A stretch of 64,000 bases of DNA from positions 372,001 through 436,000 of the IMG/VR virus record IMGVR_UViG_3300033145_003233. One strand, given 5' to 3'. The translations under genes and the position numbers were made by a program. Below the pieces are notes generated by a model. It did not search any database. It saw only the letters and a list, made by a program, of their open reading frames with translations, and had not been told where the DNA came from. Positions 6,446 through 18,782 of the stretch are shown here, piece after piece (the stretch's first letter is position 1; each line of letters opens with the position of its first letter).

Positions 6446-6790
6446 TCATTCCTCTTCGGTTTTATAAACTGTTATTTTATCATCAACATATACAATTTTT
6501 TCCCAATTCTTGAAAACTTCATCAAAATTATCAAATTCATAAACTGTGCTATAAGGATCATTCACTGCATTATTAATAGCATTCTCAAAAGAACAGTAAT
6601 TATCACCGATTTCAGATATATCAATAAAACGATCCGTTCTTAATGAAACCCATTCCCATGTATGATGACCATGACCTACTTTGATTTCTTTTAAAAAGAA
6701 TTTATTTTTAGTATCTGCTGCAAAAACATAAACATGATATTTTGCAATTGTCACAACCTTTTGACCTGTATTTGATTCTAAAATTTTCAT
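6446..6790 (-). CDS. Hypothetical protein
   Basis: Tightly packed ORF in operon. Confidence 0.65.
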   Translation of the reverse strand: MKILESNTGQKVVTIAKYHVYVFAADTKNKFFLKEIKVGHGHHTWEWVSLRTDRFIDISEIGDNYCSFENAINNAVNDPYSTVYEFDNFDEVFKNWEKIVYVDDKITVYKTEEE

Positions 6791-7314
6791 TTATTCTCCT
6801 TCTTTTTTTGTGCTAGTATATGTGTGCAAAAATCATGAACTGCACCTTTACCTCCATAATAATCTGAGGGATAAGTCACATCATCTCTAATTTGAGGAAC
6901 AGCATCAGTAGGACATGCTGTAACTCCTGCTAATTCCATGCACTCAAGGTCATTCTCTGCATCTCCCATGTATGCCACGTTACTCCATTCCAAATCTCTA
7001 CTACGCAAAAAATTATCAACAACGAGAACCTTACTTGTAGCTCCGATTGCTATAATTAATTCCTCATTATACCACTTGCTCCATCTTTCAGAATGATTAC
7101 GAATCCTCCCTACTTGCTTATGTATCACATGATCATGAGAAGCAGTAAGAATAAGTATCATTATCCCCGCTTCCATTACCCTAGTCATAGCATCAAAATC
7201 ACGAGTATAGAATGATTTAATAACATATCCATCTTTGTCAACTTGATAGATTCCATCCGTTAATGTGCCGTCCACATCAAGTACAAGCAGTTCTATCTCT
7301 TTATACATAGTCAT
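6787..7314 (-). CDS. KdsC/YrbI-family HAD phosphatase (KDO-8-P / nonulosonate-9-P phosphatase-like)
   Basis: LDVDGTLTDG, YMGDAEND, GGKGAV motifs. Confidence 0.9.
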   Translation of the reverse strand: MTMYKEIELLVLDVDGTLTDGIYQVDKDGYVIKSFYTRDFDAMTRVMEAGIMILILTASHDHVIHKQVGRIRNHSERWSKWYNEELIIAIGATSKVLVVDNFLRSRDLEWSNVAYMGDAENDLECMELAGVTACPTDAVPQIRDDVTYPSDYYGGKGAVHDFCTHILAQKKKENK

Positions 7315-7341
7315 AACTCCCTATTCTACAAGCACTTAGTA

Positions 7342-7893
7342 TTACCATTGCCCTATTATACCACATTGACAATCACTTTCAAATTGTTTTTTTCTACTAT
7401 TTTCTTCGATATATAATACGGCATTTTTTAACAAAGGAAGGGGATCTCTAAATTTGCCCCCCAAACCTCTTTCGATCATTCCCAACACGCTATTACATTT
7501 ACGGCAAAGTAATCCTCTGGGATGCCCATTTTTATGATTATGATCTAAACATAATTTATTTTTAAATTCTAATTCATGAACTTCACAAATAGCACATTTA
7601 CCTTGCTGTTTTTTATATATTTCTTCATAACCGCCAATAGTTATGCTGATTTTGCGTTTTTTCCAAACAGACATCCTGCTTTTTAGAGGGTTTTTCTCTC
7701 TATATCTCTTACTTCTTAATTTCCTCTTCTCCTTATCCTCGGCATCTGGATTGTCTTTCCTATATTTCTTAATTCTTTTCAGTATTGCTTCTTTATTTTC
7801 TTTGTAATATTTTTTACTATATTCTTTAAAATACTCTTTCTTTCTTAAACGATATTCTTTATCATATTTTTTCTTGGCTTCTTTAGAGATCAT
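7342..7893 (-). CDS. Endonuclease VII-type homing endonuclease
   Basis: QQGKCAIC...LCLDHNH..G..RGLLC..CN. Confidence 0.85.
   Translation of the reverse strand: MISKEAKKKYDKEYRLRKKEYFKEYSKKYYKENKEAILKRIKKYRKDNPDAEDKEKRKLRSKRYREKNPLKSRMSVWKKRKISITIGGYEEIYKKQQGKCAICEVHELEFKNKLCLDHNHKNGHPRGLLCRKCNSVLGMIERGLGGKFRDPLPLLKNAVLYIEENSRKKQFESDCQCGIIGQW
7355..7382 (-). promoter_or_regulatory. sigma70-like promoter TTGAAA-GTGA-16bp-TATAAT
   Basis: TTGAAAGTGATTGTCAATGTGGTATAAT upstream of the kdsC-like gene. Confidence 0.65.
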
Positions 7894-8746
7894 TTCCTCC
7901 CCTTTTGATTTTTAATTTCTCACTATTATTTCTTTCATCTTCCGTCAAGTCAATATTTTTGTAACTCAATGACCTATGACAAGCTTTCAAATTCCTACAA
8001 AGTTTTTGCAATCCAATTGGCTCTAAACTAGCGGCGTTATCTGTTCCCTTGGCCGTCCTGTCTAAAGTAAAATGTCTCTCTATCCACTCTGCCCCTAAAA
8101 CGTAAGCACCAATATCTACAGCTATTCCTAAATGATGCCCGCTATAACCAACCCTCTCAAATACCCTTTTTAATGCTGTAATTTCCATCAAATATAATTC
8201 TTTAAATTTGACAGGATAACCAGAAGTCGTGTGATATACTACTATTCTGTTTTTCTTGTCATGAAAATAATTAAATAATTTTTCTTTCCCTTTTTTAGAA
8301 ATCATCCCCAAAGATATATGAACATCGCCATGATAATTATTAAAAAGAGTATCTAATAAAACATAATTTTCATTCATGGGAGATGGTATTTTGATGAAAT
8401 CTGGGTTAAGAGATGCTATCTCTAACGCAGAGTCCTCATCCCAGACAGAAGTAGAATACCCTATTTCTAACTCATCACAATAATCTTTCAATTCTACATG
8501 TTGAGGAATTGTAAATTCTAGATTAATCCTGTGTTTTAAATATGTTTCTCCAAAAGAATGCACAGGACAAGGATGCGGTCTATTATGCATATTCATAGGC
8601 ACTGCTTTTATCGGATTCCTTTTTTGAAATTTAACATAATCAGCACCGCACAATTTTGCCATTTGAATCATTTTCTTAGCTAAATCTATATCTCCTCGAT
8701 GATTACAACCTATCTCGGAAACTATTTTACATTTCTTGTATTCCAT
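7883..8746 (-). CDS. neuB: N-acetylneuraminate/nonulosonate synthase family, lacking C-terminal SAF domain
   Basis: EIGCNHRGD, VKFQKR, KIPS, GYSGH, IERHFTLDR motifs. Confidence 0.92.
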   Translation of the reverse strand: MEYKKCKIVSEIGCNHRGDIDLAKKMIQMAKLCGADYVKFQKRNPIKAVPMNMHNRPHPCPVHSFGETYLKHRINLEFTIPQHVELKDYCDELEIGYSTSVWDEDSALEIASLNPDFIKIPSPMNENYVLLDTLFNNYHGDVHISLGMISKKGKEKLFNYFHDKKNRIVVYHTTSGYPVKFKELYLMEITALKRVFERVGYSGHHLGIAVDIGAYVLGAEWIERHFTLDRTAKGTDNAASLEPIGLQKLCRNLKACHRSLSYKNIDLTEDERNNSEKLKIKRGGNDL

Positions 8747-8889
8747 TTTTCCCCCTTTTTATATTTCTTAATATATTCAAATAGAACATCTGTCACCAAT
8801 TGAGTGAATGTTTTTTTATTCTCCTTCGCTATTGCCTTACAAATAGATATAATTTCCACATCTAATTTCATATTAACTGGTTTTTTCAT
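8722..8889 (-). CDS. Small RHH-like DNA-binding protein, not in ORF track
   Basis: MKKPVNMKLDVEIISICKAIAKENKKTFTQLVTDVLFEYIKK...; beta-alpha-alpha pattern. Confidence 0.55.
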   Translation of the reverse strand: MKKPVNMKLDVEIISICKAIAKENKKTFTQLVTDVLFEYIKKYKKGEKWNTRNVK

Positions 8890-9059: not shown

Positions 9060-9191
9060 GTGGGACAAAATTTACATTATAAACAACGTAACAACAATAA
9101 AACGAGGGCAATACCAAGAAGAAAAAGAGTTGCCAAAGAAAAAAAATGGACTCAAAAACGAAACAGATTAAGAAACAAACTAAGGATTTAG
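9060..9191 (+). CDS. Small, very basic protein (43 aa), not in ORF track
   Basis: AAGGAG SD, GTG start; MGQNLHYKQRNNNKTRAIPRRKRVAKEKKWTQKRNRLRNKLRI. Confidence 0.55.
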   Translation: MGQNLHYKQRNNNKTRAIPRRKRVAKEKKWTQKRNRLRNKLRI

Positions 9192-9557
9192 GAAATCACT
9201 TCTTCCCATTTTCCTCAATTTAGTAAAATCAATAATATGAACATTATTATGATATTGCCCTAGATATTTTTTTATATTTCTTTGACCGCGAGGATTGACC
9301 GTATGAACAACTATACACGCATTTTTAGCCAGCTGCTCTTCTTTCATAACCCAAGCCACATCTTCTCCATTCTCTTTTGGGTGGCTCAGGTCTCTATCTA
9401 GAAATATAAGGTCATAATCCTTCGTCCTTATTTCATCACAAGCTTCTTCGACTCTTTGAGCAAAGACTATATTGCAATCCCCAAATGTTTTTTGAAACCA
9501 TTTGATTCTTTCAGGACTATCTTCTAGAACAAAAATATCCATAACTCCATTATCCAT
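9180..9557 (-). CDS. Cyclic-phosphate-processing receiver (cREC)-like protein
   Basis: IFVLEDSPER...LIFLDRDL...VVHTVNPRG. Confidence 0.7.
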   Translation of the reverse strand: MDNGVMDIFVLEDSPERIKWFQKTFGDCNIVFAQRVEEACDEIRTKDYDLIFLDRDLSHPKENGEDVAWVMKEEQLAKNACIVVHTVNPRGQRNIKKYLGQYHNNVHIIDFTKLRKMGRSDFLNP

Positions 9558-10038
9558 TTTCTAAATCTTTTAAAACAGTTCTAACTTTCATTATCGCCTC
9601 ACCCAACCAATTAGTTCCTCTCCAATTTTTAGAATCTAATATCTTCGAACTAGTAGCTCTTAACCCCACTCCCCAAATACAATCAGTAGGACTAGCTTCA
9701 ACGATAACTTTATCTCCACTATCCATCAATTGTTGTTTCAAATTGTCGTGTTGTGTAAACTTCGCATAATTAGCGTCAAAAACAACTTTTCTTGCTATCT
9801 TTTCCCATTTATTCTGATCAAAATTTTTAACTCGTCTACCCCAGGATTTTTGAGCAGCTGGATCAGAACTACTCATAATCTGACCAAGAGCATAATTATC
9901 ATCGAATAATTCTGCCTTCTTAATCATCATATATTGTTCGCATGTGCAGTATTTTATATTATCTATCACTATATCACATAAATGCCATTGTGAAAAAATC
10001 CCACCATAAAAGAAAATATATTTATCAGTAACTTTCAT
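9550..10038 (-). CDS. NADAR (YbiA-like) family protein
   Basis: FSQW, EQYMM..KA.LF.D, VEASPTDCIWGVG, WRGTNWLG. Confidence 0.93.
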   Translation of the reverse strand: MKVTDKYIFFYGGIFSQWHLCDIVIDNIKYCTCEQYMMIKKAELFDDNYALGQIMSSSDPAAQKSWGRRVKNFDQNKWEKIARKVVFDANYAKFTQHDNLKQQLMDSGDKVIVEASPTDCIWGVGLRATSSKILDSKNWRGTNWLGEAIMKVRTVLKDLENG

Positions 10039-10606
10039 CTAAAAACCCATTATTTTTTAAATTATTATACACATTTTTAATCCATGTTATAAAATCATTT
10101 TTAGACATAGTATCTTTGGACCTATTACACTTTTTACAACAAGGAACACAATTGCTTTCTTCATAACCAACATTATTATCTATTCTATCAATACCATTAT
10201 ATTTAAAATCTCCATAATAATTCTTAATCTCTCTATAATTACTTGGAGGGAAACCACAATAATAACAATTCTTATTTGTCACCTCTTTAAAAAACTCTTT
10301 AGATATGTTAAATTCAATATTTCTTCTTATAGCATTCTTTCTATATCCAGCATAAACAACTCCCATTACTCCATCACCACTATTTAAACGCTTATCACAA
10401 CCGCAACTTTTTATTTTTCCTTTTTCTAGAACATCAGATCGAACCCATATATTATTTCCACAAGAGCATTCACACAACCAGTAAGATCTACCATGTCCTG
10501 CCTTGCTTGTTCTTTCTTTGCTTTTTGAACTATGCCTTATTTCTCTTTTATCAGTAACACATAACAGATTTACTTGAATATTACTCAGATCTTTTATTTT
10601 CCCCAT
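10025..10606 (-). CDS. HNH homing endonuclease
   Basis: WLCECSCG, SCGC, CYYCG, NGIDRIDN..GY...NCVPCC..CN. Confidence 0.85.
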   Translation of the reverse strand: MGKIKDLSNIQVNLLCVTDKREIRHSSKSKERTSKAGHGRSYWLCECSCGNNIWVRSDVLEKGKIKSCGCDKRLNSGDGVMGVVYAGYRKNAIRRNIEFNISKEFFKEVTNKNCYYCGFPPSNYREIKNYYGDFKYNGIDRIDNNVGYEESNCVPCCKKCNRSKDTMSKNDFITWIKNVYNNLKNNGFLDESY

Positions 10607-10766
10607 TATTTCTTTCCTGTTTAGAATATTGAACCATATAATCCCTAATCACCTCTGATATGGTTTTATATTCATTTTTACAGGACTTCTTAAAAGACTT
10701 ATATAATGAAGGTTGAACCATAACCCTAATTTCTTCTGTTAATTTTTCTCCAGCATTCTTTTTCAT
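10581..10766 (-). CDS. RHH-like regulator
   Basis: IRVMVQPSLYKSFKKSC..EYKTISEVIRDYM; close paralog at 13635-13805. Confidence 0.7.
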   Translation of the reverse strand: MKKNAGEKLTEEIRVMVQPSLYKSFKKSCKNEYKTISEVIRDYMVQYSKQERNNGENKRSE

Positions 10767-10776
10767 TATATCTTAT

Positions 10777-10791
10777 TTCTGTATTACAGAA
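10777..10791. promoter_or_regulatory. Palindromic operator TTCTGTA-T-TACAGAA
   Basis: Identical palindrome precedes the paralogous RHH at 13825-13839. Confidence 0.65.
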
Positions 10792-10800
10792 CAAAATCCT

Positions 10801-11091
10801 TTATTTATTTTCTTCTATGATTACACTTAAATCATTATTCATTATTTTTCTAATTGATGGACTAGGGCACTCCTCAATTTTCTGCATAATCTTTACTGCT
10901 TGTTTATGCCACAAATCACTGATATAAGGACAACAAAATGCATCATGCAGATGCCCCCTACGAGACATCGCCTCCCCAAAACTAGTAGCACCATGCACTC
11001 TGCGCCTTACATCACAAATTGCCCCGCAAACATCGCATTTCTTTTCTGAAACAGAATCTGGTTCAGCACTAGAAGACCCATAGCCACTCAT
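10801..11091 (-). CDS. Hypothetical Cys/His-rich protein
   Basis: CDVCG..HDAFCCP. Confidence 0.65.
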   Translation of the reverse strand: MSGYGSSSAEPDSVSEKKCDVCGAICDVRRRVHGATSFGEAMSRRGHLHDAFCCPYISDLWHKQAVKIMQKIEECPSPSIRKIMNNDLSVIIEENK

Positions 11092-11092
11092 T

Positions 11093-11359
11093 CTATGCTC
11101 CGCTTTTTAATTTTTCCAGCTCATCTCCATTGACAGCACTAATACAGTTCTTTCCACCCTCGCCCTTCCATTGAAATACAAAATTATCATTTCCAGCCTG
11201 ACTATCTTGAGACATTATAATTCCATCTACTTTTTTGCCTCCTCTAGTCAACGTAACTCTCCTACCATGCAAACTAGGTGGAGCGATAATAACTGTGCCA
11301 ACCGGCTTAGCCTCTTCAGCAACTACTTTTTTCTTTTTTTTCTTGGCTTGTTTTGCCAT
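11093..11359 (-). CDS. Hypothetical protein
   Basis: ORF with GGAG SD. Confidence 0.65.
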   Translation of the reverse strand: MAKQAKKKKKKVVAEEAKPVGTVIIAPPSLHGRRVTLTRGGKKVDGIIMSQDSQAGNDNFVFQWKGEGGKNCISAVNGDELEKLKSGA

Positions 11360-11384
11360 TTTTTTCTCCCTTTAACTTTAAATA

Positions 11385-11945
11385 TTACTTAATTTCTTTT
11401 TTATCTATATCTAATATTTCAAAACGATCTTTTATTCCACCCTCTGCCCTTCTCTCTCTCTCCTTTTCTACATAATACTTTATCTCCCCCTGAGTGATAA
11501 GAAACCTATCATTCACCACGACCCCCATATCTAAATCATCAACATGTCTACCAATAAAATTTTTAGAAAATTCTTGATGACGAGAAACTACTTCCCAATC
11601 TATCTTATCGTGATATTGATCCATAAAAGATTCTGACAACTTTTGTTTAACACACACAATATCCCAACAATGGATATAAGTCGCAAAAACCCCTAAAAAC
11701 TCATTAGATACCTTATTCTCGGCAAGAAGTACTCTCCAATTAATTTTAACAGGAAATCGTAAAAGAGAACATTTTAAATTATATTGAGTTATATAATGCT
11801 CAACAGATTTTTGAACTGTCCTGCTATAAGCTATAGAATCATCAGGATGCCTCCCGACTACAACCCTACTAGAGTCATTACAATTAGTGCCGTGACGATT
11901 GTTCCCATTAGGGTTATTCCTAATTATTGGACCTTTTTTAGCCAT
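11385..11945 (-). CDS. Tryptophan-repeat-like protein with near-terminal RFEILDI tag
   Basis: Repeats W..V...Q.LSE.F; ends DRFEILDIDKKEIK. Confidence 0.6.
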   Translation of the reverse strand: MAKKGPIIRNNPNGNNRHGTNCNDSSRVVVGRHPDDSIAYSRTVQKSVEHYITQYNLKCSLLRFPVKINWRVLLAENKVSNEFLGVFATYIHCWDIVCVKQKLSESFMDQYHDKIDWEVVSRHQEFSKNFIGRHVDDLDMGVVVNDRFLITQGEIKYYVEKERERRAEGGIKDRFEILDIDKKEIK

Positions 11946-11947
11946 TT

Positions 11948-12778
11948 TTAAAACTCGAATATCTGTCCTTCTTTAACAAAACCAGCAAATCCATCTGCTA
12001 CAGCATCAGGCATTACACCATACCTTTTGCTACCTTCCTCATCAAATTTAGATAAATCTGTATAATGATAAAGCCATATATCTTTTTTACGATCAGAAGG
12101 CATCCTTTTTAATATATCATAATTACAATGAATACCACCCGAATTAAGGGTGTCAGCATCTTGAAAAACTAAATCTATTTCCTCATCCCAAATCTCGTCA
12201 GGAGGACAAGACACAGTATCAGAAGAGATATATAATCTTTTCTTGTATTTATCTAAACCCTTACGATGATGATAAATTATCGACAAGCCATAACTATACA
12301 TATCTCCCACAAAAGAATCTACATGAAGATTCTTAACGAGATTACACTCCATTGTCGTAAACCAAAAATCAAGATGTCTATCATAAACTATATGAAGATT
12401 AAAATAAGTTTCAAGAGTCTCAAATCTAGTTCCCTTATGTTGCCTGTTCATGGCCGGTGATAACATCTGCCATAAACTATCAACCAAAGACTCATGAATA
12501 TAAAGATATATCTTACGTTTTAAAACGAAATAATTATAATAAGCCAACCAGCTCAAACCACCCATATGATCATAATGCAAATGACTAATATAAACGCCAT
12601 CTATTTCTTCTACTTTTCTATTCGCATTCTTCAGAGATTGACTGATATCCTCCCCACAATCAATCAATAAGGTATATTTGTCCCTCTTAGCTTCTGTCGC
12701 CGGAATATCTATCAACATATTAGAATTAAATCCTTCTGACAAAGCACCTGAGACACCTAAAAACGTTAATTTTGACAC
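11948..12778 (-). CDS. MBL-fold metallo-hydrolase, Apyc1 (anti-Pycsar)-like
   Basis: LLIDCG, ISHLHYDH (HxHxDH), SSDT, FQD, IH..Y..L..MP....IWLYHY. Confidence 0.75.
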   Translation of the reverse strand: MSKLTFLGVSGALSEGFNSNMLIDIPATEAKRDKYTLLIDCGEDISQSLKNANRKVEEIDGVYISHLHYDHMGGLSWLAYYNYFVLKRKIYLYIHESLVDSLWQMLSPAMNRQHKGTRFETLETYFNLHIVYDRHLDFWFTTMECNLVKNLHVDSFVGDMYSYGLSIIYHHRKGLDKYKKRLYISSDTVSCPPDEIWDEEIDLVFQDADTLNSGGIHCNYDILKRMPSDRKKDIWLYHYTDLSKFDEEGSKRYGVMPDAVADGFAGFVKEGQIFEF

Positions 12779-12841: not shown

Positions 12842-13657
12842 CTAACATAAAATTTCATTTTTGTCAAGATTATAATAAACTTTTTTTATCCATTCTATAA
12901 ATTCTCTTTTGGACATTATATCCTTTGCCCTATTACATATAGAACAACAAGGGACACAATTATCCAATTCATAGCCTTTTAAATTAACGACCCTATCTAT
13001 ACCGTTATAATGAAAACCTCCATTATTATTAGGAGCTGGATTATAATTAGATAAATCAGACCCACAATAAGAACAATTTTTCTGAGTAATTTCTTTAAAT
13101 TCTTCTTTATTTAATCTAAAAACTATTCCTTTTCTATTGGCCCTATTTCTATACTGAGAATAAATAGCATTAAAAGCTGCTTCTCCTTTTTTCTTACTGT
13201 TTACTTCTGATGCTCTTTCTTTTGCCAAACATCCACAACTCCTTGTACGCTTCTTACCAGAAACAAGAGAAGCCATTTGAATCCATTTTTCATCACCACA
13301 ATCACATTTACACAACCATTTTGTAACAAATCTTTTACCTGATTTAAACCTTTTGTGACTTGAAGTAACTACTAATTTGCCAAATCTTTTACCGCTTAAA
13401 TCAATTAAATCTTTTTTACCACTAATTTTATTTGCTCTATTCTTCATTAAAATAGAGTTATTTTCTTTTCTATAACAACCGCAACTCACATAAGAGCCAG
13501 AAGTGATAGAAGATCCTCTAATCCATTTCTTATTTCCGCAATCGCAAATACATAACCAATACGCTTTCTTGCTGTTATACTCTCTTCTCAATTCATATTC
13601 AGAAGACACAGCCAATCTCCCGAACTTTTGCCCCTCAAGATTTTTTACTTTTCCCAT
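12842..13657 (-). CDS. HNH homing endonuclease
   Basis: Two G.KFG.L.V..WLC.CDCG..SCGC modules plus NGIDR...NCVPCC..CN. Confidence 0.85.
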   Translation of the reverse strand: MGKVKNLEGQKFGRLAVSSEYELRREYNSKKAYWLCICDCGNKKWIRGSSITSGSYVSCGCYRKENNSILMKNRANKISGKKDLIDLSGKRFGKLVVTSSHKRFKSGKRFVTKWLCKCDCGDEKWIQMASLVSGKKRTRSCGCLAKERASEVNSKKKGEAAFNAIYSQYRNRANRKGIVFRLNKEEFKEITQKNCSYCGSDLSNYNPAPNNNGGFHYNGIDRVVNLKGYELDNCVPCCSICNRAKDIMSKREFIEWIKKVYYNLDKNEILC

Positions 13658-13874: not shown

Positions 13875-14789
13875 TTATCTATATACTAGATGACCGTCAA
13901 TTCCCAATTTGGCTTTTTTACTTTTGTCAAAAAGTCTGGGAACCAACTTTGGATTTTCCTCACTCCCTATATTTTTATATTCATCCTTATTGTAGATAAA
14001 ATTTTCCTTTACATTTGGTGAAAATGGATTTACATCTTCATCAACCAGACTTTTTATCCCCTCCGCCTTGGCCATACTCTCTATAAGATTAAAATCATAT
14101 TTCTTATCTATTTGAAGATTTTGAATCCCTATAGTTTCATAAACCATATGATTGTCACTTATTCTACATCCTGTTTTTAATAAAACTTTAGAATCAACCA
14201 CATAAATACTCCCATTATCGTGCATCAAAAATTTCGAATTCTCCTCATCTTCAAAAATTTCTTGCCTCATTGGACGTTTACAACAATCTTCTCCAGTTAT
14301 ATATTCCCATTTGTTATTTATTTTTTGCCAAAAAAAAGGAGTATATTTTTGAGCAGTAAAAAGACTCTTATAGTTTCCATTGCTATATTTCTCCAAACAC
14401 TTATCAAGCAATCTTTTAAAACGGCAAGGAGAGGTAGGCTGAAGATTTACTATAATTTTAAATTGCTCTCCACTTTTTTCTCTGAGATAATCCATAGAAT
14501 GTATTAATGCTTCTTCATTTTTAGACAAATCTCCTGATATTTTTTTGGGCCTCAGAATAAAAAGCAATCTGGGTTCTTCCTTTTCAGTCTTATACTTTTC
14601 AACTATTTGTTTTATCTGTAAACAATCGCTCGAAACAACAACTTTATCTACATACTTAGATTGCAAACCCGCGTCTACGCTCCATATAAACAAGGGCTTT
14701 CCTAATAATTCTCTATAGTTTTTACCATGAATTCCCTTGGACCCAGCTCTTGCTGTGATTACACACAATATTTTTTTATTTTTTATCAA
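13875..14789 (-). CDS. neuA: Acylneuraminate cytidylyltransferase (CMP-nonulosonate synthetase)
   Basis: ITARAGSKGIHGKN, LQPTSP.R, RQ, NGSIY motifs. Confidence 0.92.
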   Translation of the reverse strand: MIKNKKILCVITARAGSKGIHGKNYRELLGKPLFIWSVDAGLQSKYVDKVVVSSDCLQIKQIVEKYKTEKEEPRLLFILRPKKISGDLSKNEEALIHSMDYLREKSGEQFKIIVNLQPTSPCRFKRLLDKCLEKYSNGNYKSLFTAQKYTPFFWQKINNKWEYITGEDCCKRPMRQEIFEDEENSKFLMHDNGSIYVVDSKVLLKTGCRISDNHMVYETIGIQNLQIDKKYDFNLIESMAKAEGIKSLVDEDVNPFSPNVKENFIYNKDEYKNIGSEENPKLVPRLFDKSKKAKLGIDGHLVYR

Positions 14790-15435
14790 TTTTCTTCTTT
14801 GTCTTCCTTACATCTTTCTTTACTGCTTTTTTCTTAGCTTTCTTTACCGCTTTTTTCTTAGCTTTCTTTACTGCTTTTTTCTTAGCTTTCTTATTTTTAA
14901 TAACCTGGATTATAGCCTTACCAGCATCAGAACTGTTACATGTAGGGGATATAGGATCATCATTAGGATCATCATAATTATTTTTTATCAATTTCTCTAT
15001 CATGTCTTTTTTTTGTTCATCTTCCAATCCCTCTGTTAAATCAATTTTTATCATTTCATCCATCACAGGATTGGACCTCAAATGAACAGATTCAGCATTA
15101 GAAACAACCGGAGATGCGTTACGCATTATTGTCTTTTTAATATCTATCACCTTCGCCTCTTCCCCATATTGCTGAACAATCTCCTCCCCCTGCTCTTCAA
15201 TGAACTTACCCATAACGTTGTCACAAAATTCAACATATTCTTCATCATCTTGATAAACTCCAGAATATACTCCTCTTGTTATTTTAGATACAAATTGCAA
15301 CCTTTTTACAATCCCGCCTTTTATTTTTCCGCCTTTTTTCATATTAGCCATCATAACATTAGTCACAACTCTTCCCTCCATTACTATAGGACCAGTTGCC
15401 ATTTCTTGATTATTTGATTCATTTTCTTCTTTCAT
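14776..15435 (-). CDS. Hypothetical protein with histone H1-like Lys/Ala tail
   Basis: C-terminal (KKKAVKKA)n. Confidence 0.65.
   Translation of the reverse strand: MKEENESNNQEMATGPIVMEGRVVTNVMMANMKKGGKIKGGIVKRLQFVSKITRGVYSGVYQDDEEYVEFCDNVMGKFIEEQGEEIVQQYGEEAKVIDIKKTIMRNASPVVSNAESVHLRSNPVMDEMIKIDLTEGLEDEQKKDMIEKLIKNNYDDPNDDPISPTCNSSDAGKAIIQVIKNKKAKKKAVKKAKKKAVKKAKKKAVKKDVRKTKKKIDKK
14815..14886. repeat. Three 24-bp tandem repeats encoding AKKKAVKK
   Basis: TTTCTTTAC(T/C)GCTTTTTTCTTAGC x3. Confidence 0.9.
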
Positions 15436-16154
15436 TTCTTTTCTCCATACTTATCTAATATCTCATTTATATTCATTTTAGGAAAGCACTTTAAAGCACT
15501 TTCTGACGCATCTATTATATCAACGGTTTCTCCCAAAATGTCTTTATTAACTTTAGCAAAAGTATTCCAATAATTTACAAAGGCCTTTTGATCGAAACCT
15601 ATAGATTGTGTTCTTTTGTTAAATTTAGTCCCTGCTATCCTCTGAGCTTTATTCTCTCCCTTATATTGCCAGAAATATCTTTTACCACTTTTAAACTTGC
15701 AATCATTACCCAATAAAACAATAGGATTACATCCCATTATATATGCCAGATGGACAGCAGATCCCATAGATGTCCTTGCCCCTATAATAGGTTCACTATC
15801 TCTAAGCAATAAACCTTTCATATTAAAATGTCTTTCTTTGGGAGAATACCACCATGTGTGAGAAAATAAACAAACATAATCTAGGTGACTACAATGATCT
15901 TTTAATTTATCTCTATACAAAAATTTAACACAATCTAAAGTAGGCAACAACTCCGTATAATAGTCCCAATTTTTTACTCCTATATCATCAGATACAAAAG
16001 CATAGCAATTAGGATATTTAACTATTCCTGAATTAACTGCTATAATGACATGATCTTTAATTAAATCTATATCAACATCATGAAGAGAAGGTCCACCACC
16101 TAATAAAAAAGCTATCCTTCCCTTATATTTATCTTTAAAATCACTTACCTTCAT
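15432..16154 (-). CDS. DUF115/MptE-like (Maf-type glycosyltransferase-like) protein
   Basis: AFLLGGGPSL, IIAVN, HLAYIMGCNPIVLLGND. Confidence 0.75.
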   Translation of the reverse strand: MKVSDFKDKYKGRIAFLLGGGPSLHDVDIDLIKDHVIIAVNSGIVKYPNCYAFVSDDIGVKNWDYYTELLPTLDCVKFLYRDKLKDHCSHLDYVCLFSHTWWYSPKERHFNMKGLLLRDSEPIIGARTSMGSAVHLAYIMGCNPIVLLGNDCKFKSGKRYFWQYKGENKAQRIAGTKFNKRTQSIGFDQKAFVNYWNTFAKVNKDILGETVDIIDASESALKCFPKMNINEILDKYGEKK

Positions 16155-17320
16155 AAAATCTCAATCTCTTCTTTTAATTTAATAATTGATTTTTCGATGT
16201 TCTCATCATATCTAATTCTGTAAAGAATAATTCCCTTCTCTTTACAAAACATAGCATCAAGTTTATCTACAATTTGTTGTCTTTTAAATTGTTTCTGAGC
16301 TTTTTTGATAGATATCCCATTAAAACTCACTGGCTTAAAATGTTGTTCTCCATCATATTCTACAATCATTTTTATGTCTTTTTTCTCCAACCAAAAATCA
16401 CAATATCTCTTATGATGATAATGCCTATATCTATCCCATATCCTCTTATTAGGAACAATTTTCCAATCATCAAAATATTCTAATAAAAATTCTTTAACTT
16501 TCCCTTCTTTCTTATATCTGCAATGGGGGCAGCCGTGATCTCTTAAATGATTATTTGCGGTTGTCTCGTAATCACCATGTTTAGGACACGTAACAATGAC
16601 TTTGTGGTAATGTGTTATATATCTTGTCTTAGAATAATCATATTTATTCTTATGCACCTGACTAGCTTTTTCTACGAATTCTTCCTGAGTTAATCTTCTC
16701 TCTTTGCTTTTCCTTGCTTGCTCTATTTTACCGCAATCAGGACAACCCTTTCCTTTTAAATGATTATCTGGTGTTTGCTTAAATATGCCATGAATTTTAC
16801 AACCAATATCGATATATTTATGAAAACCATCGTAATGCATTCTACTGTAATCATACCTATCACCATGAATTTGAGACACTTCTTTAATAAATTTTTTCTC
16901 ACTTCTCTCTATTCTAGGTAATTGATTCTTTATTAAACCACAGTCTGGACATCCCTGACCATATAAATGAGCATATGGAACTTGTTTGAATTCTCCATGA
17001 ATTTTACAAATAATTACTACTTTTTTGTTACTACTTTTATATTCTACTCTAGAATAATCGTATTCGTCACCATGCATCTTTTTTGCATTTTCTATAAAAT
17101 ATTTTGTTGTGCTTGCCGCTGTTCTTGCGCAATGACCACAACCTCCACCATTTAGATGGTAAAATGCCCGTTGATAAAAAAAATACCCATGTTTATTACA
17201 ATATATTTTTACCTTATCTCTAGCTCTTACATATTCTGCTTCTCTGTAATCATACTTATCACCGTGGACAGCTTTAGATTTTCTTATAAACTCTTTTGTA
17301 GTTAATCTTTTATTTGGCAT
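16151..17320 (-). CDS. Homing endonuclease with DUF723-like repeats and Vsr/DUF559-like nuclease
   Basis: Four HG..YDYS...C..HG.F...H..G.GCP.C repeats; CDFWL..IVEYDGEQH. Confidence 0.8.
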   Translation of the reverse strand: MPNKRLTTKEFIRKSKAVHGDKYDYREAEYVRARDKVKIYCNKHGYFFYQRAFYHLNGGGCGHCARTAASTTKYFIENAKKMHGDEYDYSRVEYKSSNKKVVIICKIHGEFKQVPYAHLYGQGCPDCGLIKNQLPRIERSEKKFIKEVSQIHGDRYDYSRMHYDGFHKYIDIGCKIHGIFKQTPDNHLKGKGCPDCGKIEQARKSKERRLTQEEFVEKASQVHKNKYDYSKTRYITHYHKVIVTCPKHGDYETTANNHLRDHGCPHCRYKKEGKVKEFLLEYFDDWKIVPNKRIWDRYRHYHHKRYCDFWLEKKDIKMIVEYDGEQHFKPVSFNGISIKKAQKQFKRQQIVDKLDAMFCKEKGIILYRIRYDENIEKSIIKLKEEIEIL

Positions 17321-17607
17321 TATTCCCCCATAGGATATTGCTTCAAGGCAGCTTCAGTTATAAATCTCTGATAAGGAACATCTTTTTTGGTTCTCACAGA
17401 TTGTTTTCTTGCCAGTTGCTTAAAATGCTCTAATTCTTCTGGCAACATTCTCATAGAAAAAACAACAGTATCAGGACTTCTATGTTTTTGGATATTTAAA
17501 TCAACCAACCCATTCTCATCCACATCCTCGTCCTTTACTGTAACATCTAAATCTATAGGGGGTGCAGAAGTGTCTAATATCTCATCTTTTTTCTTTTTCT
17601 TTGCCAT
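17320..17607 (-). CDS. CopG/RHH-like protein
   Basis: VFSMRM..EELEHFKQLA....VPYQRFI; TAATG-type overlap with endonuclease. Confidence 0.55.
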   Translation of the reverse strand: MAKKKKKDEILDTSAPPIDLDVTVKDEDVDENGLVDLNIQKHRSPDTVVFSMRMLPEELEHFKQLARKQSVRTKKDVPYQRFITEAALKQYPMGE

Positions 17608-17695
17608 TTTTTCTCCATAAATAATAAGATTGTAATTCTGTAAGAAATATTCTCATATTACTTTCAAATTTCCTTCTTTTATTTTTCCACGGCGA

Positions 17696-18067
17696 TTATG
17701 GGACTGGAATATTGCGCCTGCTTGCCCCCGTATCTTCTAAATGATATTTATATTTTTTTGCTAATCTCTTTAATTCTTCCTTCTCTTTTTTCTCTTCCTT
17801 AACTGTCCATTCTTCATTCGCCTTGTCAAACTCTATCTTTTTAGCAATTCTTCCCTTACGCTCTGTATCATCTTCTTTTCTGTTACCATACAAACGAAGA
17901 CAATAGTGATCTTCTCCGTCAGTATCTAATATGAGAGAAAGTCTATAGTATTCTTCCTCATACTTTAATTTTAACTTTATTAGAATTTCAATCTCATCCC
18001 CTATCGTTTCTCCATGGATGGGAACAGTATCTACCATCTCAAAAATTTCTTCTCTATCTTCACTCAT
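17696..18067 (-). CDS. Hypothetical protein
   Basis: Packed ORF. Confidence 0.6.
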   Translation of the reverse strand: MSEDREEIFEMVDTVPIHGETIGDEIEILIKLKLKYEEEYYRLSLILDTDGEDHYCLRLYGNRKEDDTERKGRIAKKIEFDKANEEWTVKEEKKEKEELKRLAKKYKYHLEDTGASRRNIPVP

Positions 18068-18782
18068 CTTTATCCCCTTTCTCTATTATTATTTTAGCTT
18101 GATCAAAATTTATCTTATCAAATGCTTTTACCGAACTTGTCGGGCTACAACTATATATCTCTACTTTCTTACTAATAGCCCAACTCTCTAAAGCAGCATA
18201 TGCTAAATTACTTATTTCAAATACTTTCTCTTGCCCTTTATATGGTTGTTGAGCTGGCCTATTCTGAGTAGGCCAATCTTTCTTGTCCCATAATAATTGC
18301 CAATAATGGGTGGCATCTCCACATCTATTATGATCTAATCCAAAAACGAATATTCTTTTACACCCCATCTGAATAGCCAAATCAATCCCGCTAGGGACAC
18401 TAGAACAATATGCTAAACCCTCATCATCAGAATCAATAATACCCTCACTCGTTGGTCTGGGTTTGAAGAATAAAAAACCAGGAAGCTCATCTTTATATTT
18501 TAACCAACTATCTCTTACTATTTTTGTGCATTTGGAATTTAGAACTTTCTCCCACCAAGACCATCTCCTACAAAGAGAATCATTAGAAATGAAATATCTT
18601 TTATCCGGATCTCCTTCTTCCCAGTGAGTAACCATAATACTAGAATTGATAGATATGACAACATGATTAAAAATCTCAGGAAAAGAATAACTAACACATA
18701 AATCATATAAAGAAGTACCTGCTCCTAAAACAAAAGCATTCTCTCCTTCATGCTTCCCTATTAAAGATGTATAAGTATTCAT
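18060..18782 (-). CDS. DUF115/MptE-like (Maf-type glycosyltransferase-like) protein
   Basis: AFVLGAGTSL, ISIN, LAIQMGCKRIFVFGLD; paralog of 15432-16154. Confidence 0.75.
   Translation of the reverse strand: MNTYTSLIGKHEGENAFVLGAGTSLYDLCVSYSFPEIFNHVVISINSSIMVTHWEEGDPDKRYFISNDSLCRRWSWWEKVLNSKCTKIVRDSWLKYKDELPGFLFFKPRPTSEGIIDSDDEGLAYCSSVPSGIDLAIQMGCKRIFVFGLDHNRCGDATHYWQLLWDKKDWPTQNRPAQQPYKGQEKVFEISNLAYAALESWAISKKVEIYSCSPTSSVKAFDKINFDQAKIIIEKGDKDE

What the first reader, a model, noticed from the sequence alone, without database searches (positions are those of the whole stretch)
6787..18782. Apparently complete CMP-nonulosonic acid pathway with two Maf-like transferases in a phage-like genome
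Seen: NeuB-like synthase (no SAF domain), KdsC-like phosphatase, NeuA-like cytidylyltransferase and two DUF115 paralogs, dispersed among HEGs. Elsewhere in the window are a GDP-mannose-epimerase-like gene, two GT2 and one GT4. Established: synthase + HAD phosphatase + cytidylyltransferase is the route to CMP-KDN/Neu via the 9-phosphate in Bacteroides, and DUF115-containing Maf proteins transfer nonulosonates to flagellin. Inference: the element glycosylates its own virion proteins, its DNA or the host surface with a sialic-acid-like sugar.
Basis: partly seen in the sequence, partly recalled or inferred. Interest (0 to 1): 0.66.

Follow-up and report, generated by a model that had tools for sequence, protein, structure and literature searches.

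The report
Megaphage sialic-acid-like sugar pathway module
A 548-kb bacteriophage genome carries a conserved gene set for making an activated sialic-acid-like sugar, probably KDN, together with small sialyltransferase-like enzymes, which seems not to have been described in phages, although what gets glycosylated is still unknown.

Summary
Window 6787-18782 (minus strand) encodes a KdsC-family HAD phosphatase, a SAF-less NeuB synthase, a NeuA/PseF-like cytidylyltransferase and two 240-aa DUF115 proteins. Four homing-endonuclease-like genes and three anti-defence-like genes lie between them.

The window is part of a 547,943-bp tailed-phage genome, not a cell. In related 0.16-0.5-Mb phage contigs the same genes form one compact operon: DUF115 x2-3, cytidylyltransferase, NeuB, HAD. 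So this is a real module that insertions have split apart here.

A DUF115 model (pLDDT 97) matches the catalytic core of the Maf glycosyltransferase (Z 16.4) and also sialyltransferases, but it lacks Maf's flanking domains. The nearest cellular NeuBs are from Bacteroidota. There they sit beside a cytidylyltransferase::HAD fusion, and the one HAD I scored meets the KDN-9-P phosphatase cut-off.

The phage has no NeuC, no sugar aminotransferase, no flippase-like membrane proteins, and no ThyA, TET or C5-methylase. A KDN-type product is therefore most likely, and DNA glycosylation is unlikely. The acceptor is unresolved: virion proteins or host glycan.

The module borders a roughly 80-kb glycan island with two more NeuB, three more cytidylyltransferases and four more DUF115 genes.

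The parts
6787..7314 (-). KdsC-family (C0-type) HAD sugar-acid phosphate phosphatase, 175 aa. Proposed KDN-9-P (ulosonate-phosphate) phosphatase.
   Evidence: NCBIfam scores: KdsC 78.1 bits, TIGR01670 74.3, KDN-9-P phosphatase model 68.7. All are below their cut-offs. HAD motifs I-IV are intact, including DVDGTLTDG and GDAENDLE. Orthologues lie next to NeuB in L015-L018 and L020.
7342..7893 (-). Endonuclease VII-type homing-endonuclease-like gene inserted between HAD and NeuB. Not part of the pathway.
   Evidence: PF02945, 67 bits. Present at the same place in L015 but absent from the compact operons of L016-L018.
7883..8746 (-). NeuB-family nonulosonate synthase without a SAF/antifreeze-like domain, 287 aa (called NeuB_D here).
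   Evidence: PF03102, 190.3 bits. Best solved relative is 6ncs, a 290-aa NeuB, at 1e-20. Residues aligned with N. meningitidis E25, K53, Q55, K129, S132, H215, E234 and H236 are kept; E134 aligns with Met.
9180..10038 (-). cREC_REC receiver-like gene (9180-9557) and NADAR gene (9550-10038). Anti-defence-like insertions, not part of the sugar pathway.
   Evidence: PF20274, 48.5 bits; PF08719, 160.5 bits. Also present between NeuB and the cytidylyltransferase in L015 but absent from L016-L018.
10025..10606 (-). HNH-like endonuclease family member, 193 aa. Paralogue of the gene at 12842-13657.
   Evidence: Paralogue cluster in the all-against-all BLAST. The family is assigned through the paralogue's protein-atlas hit.
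11948..12778 (-). Metallo-beta-lactamase-fold protein, Apyc1-like, 276 aa. Probably an anti-defence phosphodiesterase and not a pathway enzyme.
   Evidence: PF23023, 47.9 bits against a cut-off of 50; Lactamase_B_2, 44.5 bits. Orthologues in L012 and L015.
12842..13657 (-). HNH-like endonuclease family protein, 271 aa.
   Evidence: No Pfam hit. Protein-atlas feature score 0.98 to phage 'HNH endonuclease family' clusters.
13875..14789 (-). NeuA/PseF-like CMP-nonulosonate synthetase (cytidylyltransferase), 304 aa, with a C-terminal extension of about 60 aa.
   Evidence: PF02348, 72.6 bits. PseF model 86.9 bits against KdsB models at 35 bits or less. The N-terminal ARAGSKG...KN motif is present. 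Orthologues lie directly beside NeuB in L016-L018.
14776..15435 (-). Unknown 219-aa ORF between the cytidylyltransferase and DUF115.
   Evidence: No Pfam or NCBIfam hit. No usable atlas hit, and the atlas model is poor at pLDDT 0.42. No homologue in the related loci.
15432..16154 (-). DUF115/MptE-like protein D1, 240 aa. Proposed CMP-nonulosonate-dependent glycosyltransferase, consisting of the Maf catalytic core only.
   Evidence: PF01973, 34.8 bits. 132 homologues of about 240 aa, several on contigs of 220-470 kb. AF2 model pLDDT 97.4. Maf 5mu5 residues 262-514: Z 16.4, rmsd 3.0 over 186 residues. MptE Z 11.4; sialyltransferases Z 7.4-8.8.
16151..17320 (-). DUF723/DUF4379 zinc-finger homing-endonuclease-like gene, 389 aa, inserted between the two DUF115 genes.
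   Evidence: PF14311 and PF05265. Paralogues at window 54214-55533 and at genome 437.4 kb. Absent from the compact operons.
18060..18782 (-). DUF115 protein D2, 240 aa. Second proposed nonulosonate transferase.
   Evidence: PF01973, 18.7 bits, E 0.0015. 25% identical to D1. Orthologues in L012 (49%) and L017 (44%). Linked to the cellular DUF115 that neighbours NeuB by jackhmmer, E 2.7e-29.
135..1154 (-). SDR-type NDP-sugar epimerase/dehydratase, 339 aa. One of six paralogues in the glycan island.
   Evidence: PF01370 and PF16363. Six-member paralogue cluster.
52127..54212 (-). GT2 (52127-52918) and GT1/GT4 (53118-54212) glycosyltransferases.
   Evidence: PF00535; PF00534.
59185..59931 (-). GT2 glycosyltransferase, 248 aa.
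   Evidence: PF00535.

Best explanation
The region is a phage-encoded pathway for an activated sialic-acid-like sugar, together with enzymes that probably transfer it. It belongs to a clade of roughly 0.5-Mb tailed phages and was probably acquired once from Bacteroidota.

Proposed mechanism:
1. The SAF-less NeuB condenses PEP with a host hexose-6-phosphate, most likely mannose-6-P, to give a nonulosonate 9-phosphate.
2. The KdsC-type HAD removes the phosphate.
3. The NeuA/PseF-like enzyme activates the sugar with CTP, giving CMP-KDN or a close analogue.
4. The two 240-aa DUF115 proteins use the CMP-sugar to cap an acceptor. They consist of the catalytic core of Maf and share the sialyltransferase fold.

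In this genome the operon has been pulled apart by four homing-endonuclease-like genes and three anti-defence-like genes. It forms the edge of a roughly 80-kb island made up entirely of soluble sugar-pathway enzymes.

The acceptor is probably built in the cytoplasm on phage-made material, with virion surface or fibre proteins my first choice. This is the least certain step.

Shown: gene identities, intact catalytic motifs, the DUF115 fold, module conservation and its phylogeny. Inferred: the substrate (KDN), the transferase activity of DUF115, and the acceptor.
For: Catalytic residues of NeuB and the HAD motifs are intact.

Module conservation:
- Contigs of 164, 488 and 499 kb carry DUF115 x2-3, cytidylyltransferase, NeuB and HAD as one contiguous operon in the same gene order.
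- Contigs of 351 and 118 kb carry the spread-out version.
- Both complete relatives with terminal repeats have NeuB and 6-7 DUF115 hits.
- The seven phage NeuBs form one clade (SH-aLRT 89) inside the Bacteroidota-dominated SAF-less NeuB group (95).

The 9-phosphate route:
- 57 of 80 cellular loci have a cytidylyltransferase::HAD fusion directly after NeuB.
- The one HAD domain I scored reaches NCBI's KDN-9-P phosphatase equivalog cut-off, 183.6 against 180.

KDN rather than Neu5Ac, Leg or Pse: the genome has no NeuC-type epimerase and no DegT-type aminotransferase. The established KDN route needs only Man-6-P, PEP and CTP (PMC6200933).

DUF115 as transferase:
- Model pLDDT 97.4.
- Maf core Z 16.4, well above MptE at 11.4; GT42 and GT29 sialyltransferases Z 7.4-8.8.
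- Always adjacent to the CMP-sugar genes in the phages, and adjacent in about 8 of 80 cellular loci.

Cytoplasmic, phage-directed use:
- No protein with two or more predicted membrane helices in the 305-400 kb stretch that contains the island.
- A GT1 sits among giant putative fibre genes.
- A DUF115 paralogue sits beside Ser/Thr-rich Laminin_G_3 proteins.
- The genome encodes a poly-Ser protein and a collagen-like (GSS)n protein.
- In the cultured phage CcrColossus, a distant DUF115 homologue annotated as a sialyltransferase directly follows a 1665-aa tail protein.
Against: - No enzyme has been assayed.
- The phage HADs do not separate KdsC from KDN-9-P phosphatase. They score 65-90 bits on both models and are below every cut-off.
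- NeuB has Met at the position of N. meningitidis catalytic E134. This position varies across the SAF-less sequences aligned in A2.
- D2 is below Pfam's cut-off and D1 barely reaches it. The DUF115 fold is shared with pyrophosphokinases (MptE, thiamin pyrophosphokinase).
- In the two cellular relatives examined, the module lies in a Wzx/YfhO surface-polysaccharide locus. That favours a glycan acceptor and possibly a host-surface role.
- The collagen-like candidate acceptor has no homologue in five related phage contigs, so it is not a conserved partner of the module.
- The membrane-helix scan was a crude hydropathy window.
Confidence: 0.6

Rival explanations
1. Host-surface remodelling. The phage makes the CMP-sugar and, with its DUF115 and GT1/GT2 enzymes, alters the infected cell's capsule, LPS or other lipid-linked glycan, using the host's carrier lipid, flippase and polymerase. 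The purpose would be to block superinfection or change recognition of the cell.
For: In the two cellular homologue loci examined, the module sits in surface-polysaccharide loci with GT2, DUF115, a Wzx-like Polysacc_synt protein and YfhO. The module was probably acquired from Bacteroidota. Sugar clusters in jumbo cyanophages have been interpreted this way (PMC7824862).
Against: The 305-400 kb stretch containing the island encodes no protein with two or more predicted membrane helices, so no flippase, polymerase or priming transferase. Some GT and DUF115 paralogues lie among putative virion fibre or lectin-domain genes. An island this large is a heavy investment for a lytic-cycle surface change.
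Confidence: 0.28
2. DNA hypermodification. The ulosonic acid is transferred onto hydroxymethylated pyrimidines in phage DNA to evade restriction or CRISPR.
For: A phage glycosyltransferase that puts a Kdo-like sugar acid on 5hmC, and a HAD + cytidylyltransferase + GT cluster that puts heptose on DNA, have been reported (bioRxiv 10.1101/2023.12.21.572611). The module lies next to the replication genes.
Against: No ThyA/hydroxymethylase family, no TET/JBP dioxygenase and no C5 DNA methyltransferase was found in the complete genome. The reported DNA glycosyltransferases have GT-A or GT-B folds, not the DUF115 fold.
Confidence: 0.04
3. The DUF115 proteins are not glycosyltransferases. They would be MptE- or thiamin-pyrophosphokinase-like (pyro)phosphokinases, or regulators like SteA. 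The CMP-sugar would then be used by other glycosyltransferases or simply add to the host pool.
For: Pfam names the family after MptE. MptE (Z 11.4), SteA (Z 10.6) and thiamin pyrophosphokinases (Z 7-8) are structural neighbours. The only sequence hit in the PDB is MptE, and it is weak at E 0.06. One DUF115 paralogue lies among nucleotide-metabolism genes.
Against: The Maf core match is clearly the best (Z 16.4, 186 residues at 3.0 A). The genes are tightly linked, with overlapping reading frames, to the CMP-nonulosonate genes in three phage genomes. No folate or thiamin pathway context was seen in the annotated stretches.
Confidence: 0.08
4. The contig is cellular or a chimera, and the locus is an ordinary bacterial capsule or LPS cluster.
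For: Near-identical fragments occur in an NCBI genome bin, GCA_054384775.1. The closest non-phage homologues are bacterial polysaccharide genes.
Against: It is an IMG/VR virus record that CheckV rates 100% complete. It has portal and tail proteins, many homing endonucleases, phage-type replication genes and giant fibre-like ORFs. Complete 488- and 499-kb relatives with direct terminal repeats are syntenic around the module.
Confidence: 0.02

Closest known systems
KDN pathway of Bacteroides thetaiotaomicron type (KDN-9-P synthase, KDN-9-P phosphatase, CMP-KDN synthetase)
   Same: Same three enzyme families and the same phosphorylated-intermediate logic. The nearest cellular NeuBs (53-55% identity) are mostly from Bacteroidota. 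They are followed by a cytidylyltransferase::HAD fusion, and the one HAD I scored meets the KDN-9-P phosphatase equivalog cut-off. The route itself is described in PMC6200933.
   Different: Here it is encoded by a phage. The phosphatase is a separate, divergent gene that scores below every NCBIfam cut-off. The substrate is untested. The genes are coupled to DUF115 proteins and split by mobile genes.
Maf (motility-associated factor) flagellin nonulosonate glycosyltransferases, e.g. Magnetospirillum Maf, PDB 5mu5
   Same: The DUF115 catalytic core superposes on Maf residues 262-514 (Z 16.4, rmsd 3.0 A over 186 residues). Both are genetically linked to CMP-nonulosonate synthesis genes.
   Different: The phage proteins are 240 aa against 632 residues in the solved Maf chain. 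[quoted passage not shown] There is no flagellin context. Cellular counterparts sit in polysaccharide loci.
GT42 (Campylobacter Cst-I/II) and GT29 (animal) sialyltransferases
   Same: Shared fold at moderate scores: Cst-I Z 8.8, GT29 enzymes Z 7.4-8.4, Foldseek hit to Cst-II with TM 0.50. A GxGPS-type N-terminal motif is conserved in the family. Its resemblance to the Cst-II motif is from my memory and is only a lead.
   Different: No significant sequence similarity. Catalytic residues were not mapped.
Virus-encoded glycosylation machineries of giant viruses (Mimivirus-type fibril glycosylation; the putative CMP-Kdo pathway of Cafeteria roenbergensis virus)
   Same: A very large virus carrying its own soluble sugar-nucleotide pathways and glycosyltransferases, including a ulosonic-acid branch with a phosphatase and a NeuA-like cytidylyltransferase (PMC9614988).
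   Different: Those are viruses of eukaryotes. That review never uses the terms nonulosonic, sialic acid, Kdn, legionaminic or pseudaminic. Here the host is a bacterium, the synthase is NeuB-type, and the transferases are DUF115.
Sugar-modification clusters of jumbo cyanophages
   Same: Clusters of SDR epimerases, cupin isomerases, nucleotidyltransferases and several glycosyltransferase families in phages over 200 kb (PMC7824862; PMC12801897).
   Different: Those clusters have up to about 15-22 genes, are read as host capsule or LPS modification, and no NeuB, nonulosonate or DUF115 component is reported. One cyanophage is reported with KdsA and KdsB.
Caulobacter phage CcrColossus gp126, annotated 'alpha-2,3-sialyltransferase', and homologues in CcrPW and Brevundimonas jumbo phages
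   Same: Distant homologues (21-22% identity over 93% of the query) of the DUF115 protein in cultured jumbo phages. The CcrColossus gene lies directly after a 1665-aa tail protein and before other glycosyltransferases and a methyltransferase.
   Different: tblastn found no NeuB homologue in those phage records, so any donor would have to come from the host. The function is an annotation only.
Phage DNA sugar-hypermodification gene clusters (C5-MT + 5mYOX/TET or ThyA + DNA glycosyltransferase)
   Same: Phage clusters with HAD-like, cytidylyltransferase and glycosyltransferase genes. One product is assigned as a Kdo-like sugar acid on 5hmC.
   Different: The enzymes that make the acceptor base are absent here, and the transferase fold is different.

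Membership tests
NeuB / nonulosonate synthase family (PF03102) | NeuB TIM-barrel domain above Pfam's gathering score | tested here: met
   190.3 bits against a cut-off of 22.1, matching model positions 1-237 of 241.
NeuB / nonulosonate synthase family (PF03102) | Metal-binding His pair and substrate-binding or catalytic residues (N. meningitidis E25, K53, Q55, K129, S132, E134, H215, E234, H236) | tested here: inconclusive
   All are conserved in the window NeuB and both paralogues except E134, which aligns with Met in the window protein and with Glu in paralogue B.
NeuB / nonulosonate synthase family (PF03102) | C-terminal SAF/antifreeze-like domain, as in the characterised NeuB of N. meningitidis | tested here: not met
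   The protein ends after the barrel, and the NCBIfam NeuB model is matched only at positions 2-273 of 329. SAF-less NeuBs are a recognised environmental subgroup (PMC8208679). The best PDB match, 6ncs, is 290 aa.
NCBIfam equivalogs NeuB_NnaB (TIGR03569) and PseI (TIGR03586) | Score above the curated equivalog cut-off | tested here: not met
   171.7 against 399.65, and 120.3 against 340.25. So it is neither a canonical Neu5Ac synthase nor a pseudaminic acid synthase.
KDN-9-phosphate pathway (Bacteroides type) | Co-encoded synthase, KdsC-family phosphatase and cytidylyltransferase | tested here: met
   All three are in the window. They are contiguous in L016-L018. 57 of 80 cellular loci have the cytidylyltransferase::HAD fusion next to NeuB.
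KDN-9-phosphate pathway (Bacteroides type) | Phosphatase reaches the KDN-9-P phosphatase equivalog cut-off (NF058599, 180 bits) | tested here: not met
   Window HAD 68.7 bits. Phage orthologues 65.6-90.2 bits. The cellular fusion partner does reach it, at 183.6 bits.
KDN-9-phosphate pathway (Bacteroides type) | Synthase uses Man-6-P + PEP, and the cytidylyltransferase accepts KDN | not testable with these tools
   This needs enzyme assays. Indirect support: no NeuC-type epimerase and no DegT-type aminotransferase in the genome.
Maf flagellin glycosyltransferases | Central DUF115/MAF_flag10 catalytic domain | tested here: met
   Structure match to 5mu5 residues 262-514, Z 16.4. Pfam PF01973: 34.8 bits for D1 (cut-off 34.6) and 18.7 for D2.
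Maf flagellin glycosyltransferases | Large multidomain protein with N- and C-terminal domains flanking the catalytic core | tested here: not met
   240 aa, and the whole length aligns to the core only. The solved Maf chain has 632 residues. All 132 family members found are about 204-268 aa, but that search sees only 0.55-1.75 times the query length.
Maf flagellin glycosyltransferases | Genomic association with flagellin or flagellar genes | tested here: not met
   None appears in the annotated phage stretches or in the two cellular loci, which are polysaccharide loci. No dedicated flagellin search was run.
MptE-type 6-hydroxymethylpterin pyrophosphokinase | Closest structural and sequence relative is MptE, with a folate-pathway context | tested here: not met
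   MptE scores Z 11.4 against Maf at 16.4. The sequence hit has E 0.06 over 37 residues only. The genomic context is CMP-sugar genes.
Phage DNA sugar-hypermodification clusters | A hydroxymethyl-pyrimidine-forming enzyme (ThyA-family hydroxymethylase, or C5-MT plus TET/5mYOX) in the genome | tested here: not met
   No match for PF00303, PF12851 or PF00145 in the 548-kb genome. ThyX was not searched, and very divergent enzymes could be missed.
Wzx/Wzy-type surface polysaccharide locus | Flippase, polymerase or polyprenyl-phosphate priming transferase (multi-pass membrane proteins) in the cluster | tested here: not met
   A hydropathy scan finds no protein with two or more predicted membrane helices between 305 and 400 kb. 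This is a crude method. The cellular relatives do have Polysacc_synt and YfhO.

The most novel reading that the evidence does not exclude
A clade of roughly 0.5-Mb megaphages, probably infecting Bacteroidota, runs an autonomous cytoplasmic glycosylation factory. In this genome it spans about 80 kb and includes three NeuB-type synthases, four CMP-ulosonate synthetases (one a true KdsB paired with an HpaI-type aldolase), eight DUF115 sialyltransferase-like enzymes, at least eight GT1/GT2 genes, and methyl- and sulfotransferase-like genes. It would coat the phage's own virion fibres or surface proteins with acidic, sialic-acid-like glycans. That would make it the bacteriophage counterpart of Mimivirus fibril glycosylation, and the first virus-made nonulosonate glycoconjugate.
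Probability: 0.3. Interest if true: 0.85.

Novelty: new variant of a known kind. Interest (0 to 1): 0.62.

Why it matters
Sialic-acid-like sugars are key recognition molecules on cell surfaces. Viruses are known to bind or cleave them. I found no report of a virus making one.

- Full-text searches found no paper describing nonulosonate synthesis or DUF115/Maf-type transferases in phages.
- Two major jumbo/huge-phage papers and a jumbo-phage genomic overview do not mention sialic acid.
- Only 3 of 50,697 deposited phage records hold a NeuB homologue, and one of those is a Moritella contig.

A conserved, self-sufficient CMP-KDN-type module in several roughly half-megabase phages suggests these phages build acidic glycans themselves, either on their particles or on the infected cell. 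That would affect host range, decoy or shielding strategies, and recognition by grazers or immune systems.

The finding also supplies a large family of minimal, 240-aa sialyltransferase-like enzymes for glycoengineering. It gives a testable link between megaphages and Bacteroidota surface-glycan biology.

Tried and rejected
- Megablast of the 12-kb region against 50,697 phage records: no match.
I repeated it with single proteins.
- PDB sequence search with the DUF115 profile: only a weak MptE hit, E 0.06. The fold search was needed.
- tblastn of the neighbouring UvrD-like helicase, to place the phage among cultured phages: only about 35% identity to unrelated phages, so uninformative.
No reads were laid, and nothing can be said about expression or DNA modification from reads.
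- Two encoding-contig look-ups failed because my ORF starts differed from the recorded gene calls.
- Protein atlas for the 219-aa ORF at 14776-15435: no usable hit.
- I hoped the phage HADs would resolve KdsC from KDN-9-P phosphatase. They do not.
- I tested whether the collagen-like (GSS)n protein is a conserved partner of the module. No homologue was found in five related phage contigs, so I dropped it as a clade-wide acceptor.
- An alternative genetic code is not needed. The standard code already gives dense ORF coverage.
- The large representative-protein search, the complex predictor and the second structure job were not used.

Full report
**What the window is**

The window is bases 372,001-436,000 of a single 547,943-bp IMG/VR virus record that CheckV rates 100% complete. 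GC content is 33.6%, and the standard genetic code already gives dense open reading frames. The genome encodes a portal protein (phrog_16240, E 1.8e-43) and tail proteins. It also has phage-type replication genes next to the finding: a UvrD-like helicase, RecA, a split DnaE, DnaB and a primase. Giant ORFs of up to 5,139 aa are present as well. It is therefore a tailed megaphage, not a cellular contig. No close cultured relative exists. Near-identical fragments occur in an NCBI genome bin, GCA_054384775.1.

**Observation check**

| Gene | Window coordinates | Length | Key scores |
|---|---|---|---|
| KdsC-family HAD | 6787-7314 | 175 aa | KdsC 78 bits; KDN-9-P phosphatase model 69 bits |
| NeuB, no SAF domain | 7883-8746 | 287 aa | PF03102 190 bits |
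| NeuA/PseF-like cytidylyltransferase | 13875-14789 | 304 aa | PF02348 72.6 bits; PseF model 86.9 bits |
| DUF115/MptE-like D1 | 15432-16154 | 240 aa | PF01973 34.8 bits (cut-off 34.6) |
| DUF115/MptE-like D2 | 18060-18782 | 240 aa | PF01973 18.7 bits |

Several unrelated genes lie between them:
- an Endonuclease VII gene (7342-7893);
- a DUF723/DUF4379 zinc-finger gene (16151-17320);
- two members of a phage HNH-like family (10025-10606 and 12842-13657);
- a cREC_REC gene, a NADAR gene and an Apyc1-like metallo-beta-lactamase gene (9180-12778).

The epimerase, the two GT2 genes and the GT1/GT4 gene mentioned for the rest of the window are also real.

**The enzymes look functional**

- **NeuB.** The window NeuB and its two paralogues elsewhere in the genome keep the residues that align with N. 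meningitidis E25, K53, Q55, K129, S132, H215, E234 and H236. The one exception is E134, which aligns with Met in the window protein. This position varies across the SAF-less sequences I aligned. SAF-less NeuBs are a recognised environmental subgroup (PMC8208679), and the best solved relative, 6ncs, is 290 aa.
- **HAD.** All four HAD motifs are present in the KdsC-type arrangement.
- **Cytidylyltransferase.** The N-terminal nucleotide-binding motif is present.

**The module is real and conserved**

NeuB relatives were found on other very large IMG/VR contigs. Comparing their ORFs with this genome gave the following:
- Contigs of 164 kb (GC 39%), 488 kb (GC 44%) and 499 kb (GC 49%) carry DUF115, DUF115 (a third copy in one), cytidylyltransferase, NeuB and HAD as one contiguous operon with overlapping ORFs. 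The order is the same as in the window. The same neighbours flank it: the helicase side and the glycosyltransferase side.
- A 351-kb contig (NeuB 76% identical) shares the spread-out layout, including the Endonuclease VII, cREC, NADAR and MBL insertions.
- A 118-kb contig and a 65-kb contig hold variants.

The window's arrangement is therefore a conserved five- to six-gene module that mobile and anti-defence-like genes have split apart.

The two complete relatives, which have direct terminal repeats, hold 1-2 NeuB genes and 6-7 DUF115 hits. In a maximum-likelihood tree the seven megaphage NeuBs form one clade (SH-aLRT 89). That clade sits inside a well-supported group (95) of SAF-less NeuBs, mostly from Bacteroidota with some Clostridia. 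The simplest reading is one acquisition followed by vertical descent. The genome's other two NeuBs are only 24-31% identical to it and to each other, and they fall outside that group.

**The cellular counterpart and the likely sugar**

The closest cellular NeuBs (53-55% identity) lie on chromosome-sized contigs. In the two loci I examined, the neighbourhood is GT2, DUF115, NeuB, a cytidylyltransferase::HAD fusion and a methyltransferase::pyruvyl-transferase, close to a Wzx-like Polysacc_synt protein and YfhO.

Across 80 cellular loci, mostly Bacteroidota, 57 have the cytidylyltransferase::HAD fusion directly after NeuB. This gene fusion ties the phosphatase step to the pathway.

I scored one of these fusions. 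Its HAD domain reaches NCBI's curated cut-off for the Bacteroides-type KDN-9-phosphate phosphatase, 183.6 against 180 bits. The phage HADs are more divergent and do not separate KdsC from KDN-9-P phosphatase.

The complete phage genome has no NeuC-type UDP-GlcNAc 2-epimerase and no DegT-type aminotransferase. It cannot supply precursors for Neu5Ac, legionaminic or pseudaminic acid. The KDN route needs only host Man-6-P, PEP and CTP (route as in PMC6200933). KDN, or a close neutral analogue made through its 9-phosphate, is thus the best-supported product. This is an inference, not a demonstration.

**The DUF115 proteins**

The D1 family has 132 metagenomic homologues of about 240 aa, several on contigs of 220-470 kb. 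An AlphaFold2 model built on a 49-sequence alignment is very confident, with pLDDT 97.4 and pTM 0.94.

Its structural matches rank as follows:
- the catalytic central domain of the Maf glycosyltransferase, 5mu5 residues 262-514: Z 16.4, rmsd 3.0 A over 186 residues;
- archaeal MptE: Z 11.4;
- SteA: Z 10.6;
- Campylobacter Cst-I: Z 8.8;
- animal GT29 sialyltransferases: Z 7.4-8.4;
- thiamin pyrophosphokinases: Z 7-8.

The whole 240 residues correspond to the Maf core, so the flanking Maf domains are absent. 'Maf-like' therefore holds for the catalytic fold only.

In cellular loci, DUF115 is adjacent to NeuB in only about 8 of 80 cases. There it sits in polysaccharide loci, not flagellar ones. 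This hints that the short DUF115 enzymes cap glycans rather than recognise a protein directly.

The module is the right-hand edge of a glycan island at about 309-391 kb of the genome. Genome-wide there are:
- three NeuB genes;
- four CTP_transf_3 genes;
- eight DUF115-like ORFs, four clear and four distant.

The island also holds:
- six SDR epimerase/dehydratases;
- an RmlC-like isomerase;
- two transketolase/E1-like gene pairs;
- an aldo-keto reductase;
- at least eight GT1/GT2 genes;
- about ten methyltransferases;
- two sulfotransferase-like genes.

One cytidylyltransferase is a true KdsB: 238 bits against a cut-off of 193, and TIGR00466 at 159.1 against 155.2. It sits beside an HpaI-type aldolase, a 2-hydroxyacid dehydrogenase and a DUF115.

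**What is glycosylated**

This cannot be settled from sequence. The evidence for each candidate is as follows.

- **Cytoplasmic, phage-directed target (virion proteins).**
  - No protein with two or more predicted membrane helices is encoded between 305 and 400 kb, so there is no flippase, polymerase or priming transferase. The scan was crude.
  - A GT1 lies between giant putative fibre genes.
  - A DUF115 paralogue abuts Ser/Thr-rich Laminin_G_3 lectin-domain proteins.
  - The genome encodes a protein with a poly-Ser tail of about 190 aa and a collagen-like (GSS)n protein (Pfam Collagen, 51.6 bits).
  - In the cultured phage CcrColossus, a distant DUF115 homologue annotated as a sialyltransferase directly follows a 1665-aa tail protein.
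- **Against one specific acceptor.** The collagen-like protein has no homologue in five related phage contigs.
- **Host-surface target.** The cellular homologues work in surface-polysaccharide loci. Jumbo-cyanophage sugar clusters have been read this way.
- **DNA.** A phage glycosyltransferase that adds a Kdo-like acid to 5hmC has been reported. This genome, however, has no ThyA-family, TET/JBP or C5-methyltransferase gene, and the reported DNA transferases have a different fold.

**Novelty**

- Full-text searches found no paper on nonulosonate synthesis or DUF115/Maf-type enzymes in phages.
- A jumbo-phage genomic overview, the 2020 huge-phage paper and a 2026 review do not mention sialic acid.
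- The giant-virus glycan review describes a putative Kdo pathway but uses none of the nonulosonate terms I searched.
- Only three of 50,697 deposited phage records hold a NeuB homologue, and one of those is a Moritella contig.

The building blocks are all known kinds. Their combination is what is new: a phage-encoded, clade-conserved CMP-nonulosonate module with minimal sialyltransferase-like enzymes, inside an island this size. I rate it a new variant of a known kind.

**Limits**

- No enzyme activity, expression or glycan was observed.
- Host assignment to Bacteroidota rests only on the NeuB phylogeny.
- The KDN-phosphatase equivalog result rests on one cellular fusion protein.
- Statements about Cst-II motifs come from my memory and are leads only.

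Noticed in passing
G000 329.9-333.8 kb (L006:9887-13806), outside the window: A second kind of CMP-ulosonate module. It has an HpcH/HpaI-type pyruvate aldolase (260 aa), a 2-hydroxyacid dehydrogenase (317 aa), a true KdsB (NF003952, 238 bits against a cut-off of 193), a DUF115 (226 aa) and a sulfotransferase-like gene. There is no NeuB in or beside it, and KdsA was not searched for. This suggests a 3-deoxy-ulosonic acid made by an aldolase route.
   Followed up: partly
G000 344.5-345.3 kb (L007:4520-5311) and 358.0-359.5 kb (L008:3000-4457): Two further NeuB paralogues, only 24-31% identical to the window NeuB and to each other. Each has its own cytidylyltransferase and a DUF115 nearby. The 485-aa paralogue carries a cupin-like C-terminal extension of about 200 aa.
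   Followed up: partly
window 9180-12778: cREC_REC, NADAR and an Apyc1-like metallo-beta-lactamase (47.9 bits, cut-off 50) sit inside the sugar module. All three are kept at the same place in one relative (L015), and the MBL also in L012. This looks like an anti-defence islet that has hitch-hiked into the operon.
   Followed up: partly
window 56000-59200: Six small plus-strand ORFs in an otherwise minus-strand genome. GC content drops to 0.265-0.29 and GC skew reverses. No Pfam hits. The stretch lies between a DUF4379 endonuclease-like gene and a GT2, so it may be a foreign insertion.
   Followed up: no
window 23373-27654: Three radical-SAM genes in a row, plus a CxxCxxCC protein and a SpoVS homologue, between the helicase and the primase. 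The non-radical-SAM neighbours are conserved in related megaphages; the radical-SAM genes were not. Function unknown.
   Followed up: no
window 33016-38391 and 47011-47520: DNA polymerase III alpha is split into two genes: PHP + pol3_alpha (470 aa) and pol3_alpha + finger + HHH (660 aa). The phage also encodes a translation initiation factor IF3 homologue.
   Followed up: no
window 1176-1910 and 4423-5115: Hint/intein-splicing-domain proteins. Homologues of the 244-aa one are conserved neighbours of the sugar module in four related phage loci. A peptide deformylase (4976-5614) and two DUF1257 genes (5624-6444) lie beside them.
   Followed up: no
G000 56,603-57,880; 546,671-547,921; 1,473-5,039: A 425-aa protein ending in about 190 residues of (S5-6 V/I) repeats, and two paralogous proteins with long (GSS/GTS)n collagen-type repeats (Pfam Collagen, 51.6 bits). 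The collagen-like gene runs into the contig end, so the assembly probably broke in the repeat. No homologue of the 1188-aa paralogue (the one searched) was found in five related phage contigs.
   Followed up: partly
G000 442-502 kb: A run of giant ORFs of 1,078-5,139 aa with almost no Pfam hits (Flg_new_2 and Laminin_G_3 only). A GT1 glycosyltransferase is embedded between them at 474.5 kb.
   Followed up: no
G000 42,666-43,376: One DUF115 paralogue lies away from any sugar genes, between an HNH endonuclease and the ribonucleotide reductase large subunit, near macro-domain, sigma-factor and NAPRTase genes. The arrangement is syntenic in a related 46-kb contig, L013.
   Followed up: no
L009, L023, L031 (NCBI assembly GCA_054384775.1): Contigs of 6-12 kb in a public genome bin encode proteins identical to this phage's. 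The same or a nearly identical phage has been binned as part of a MAG.
   Followed up: no
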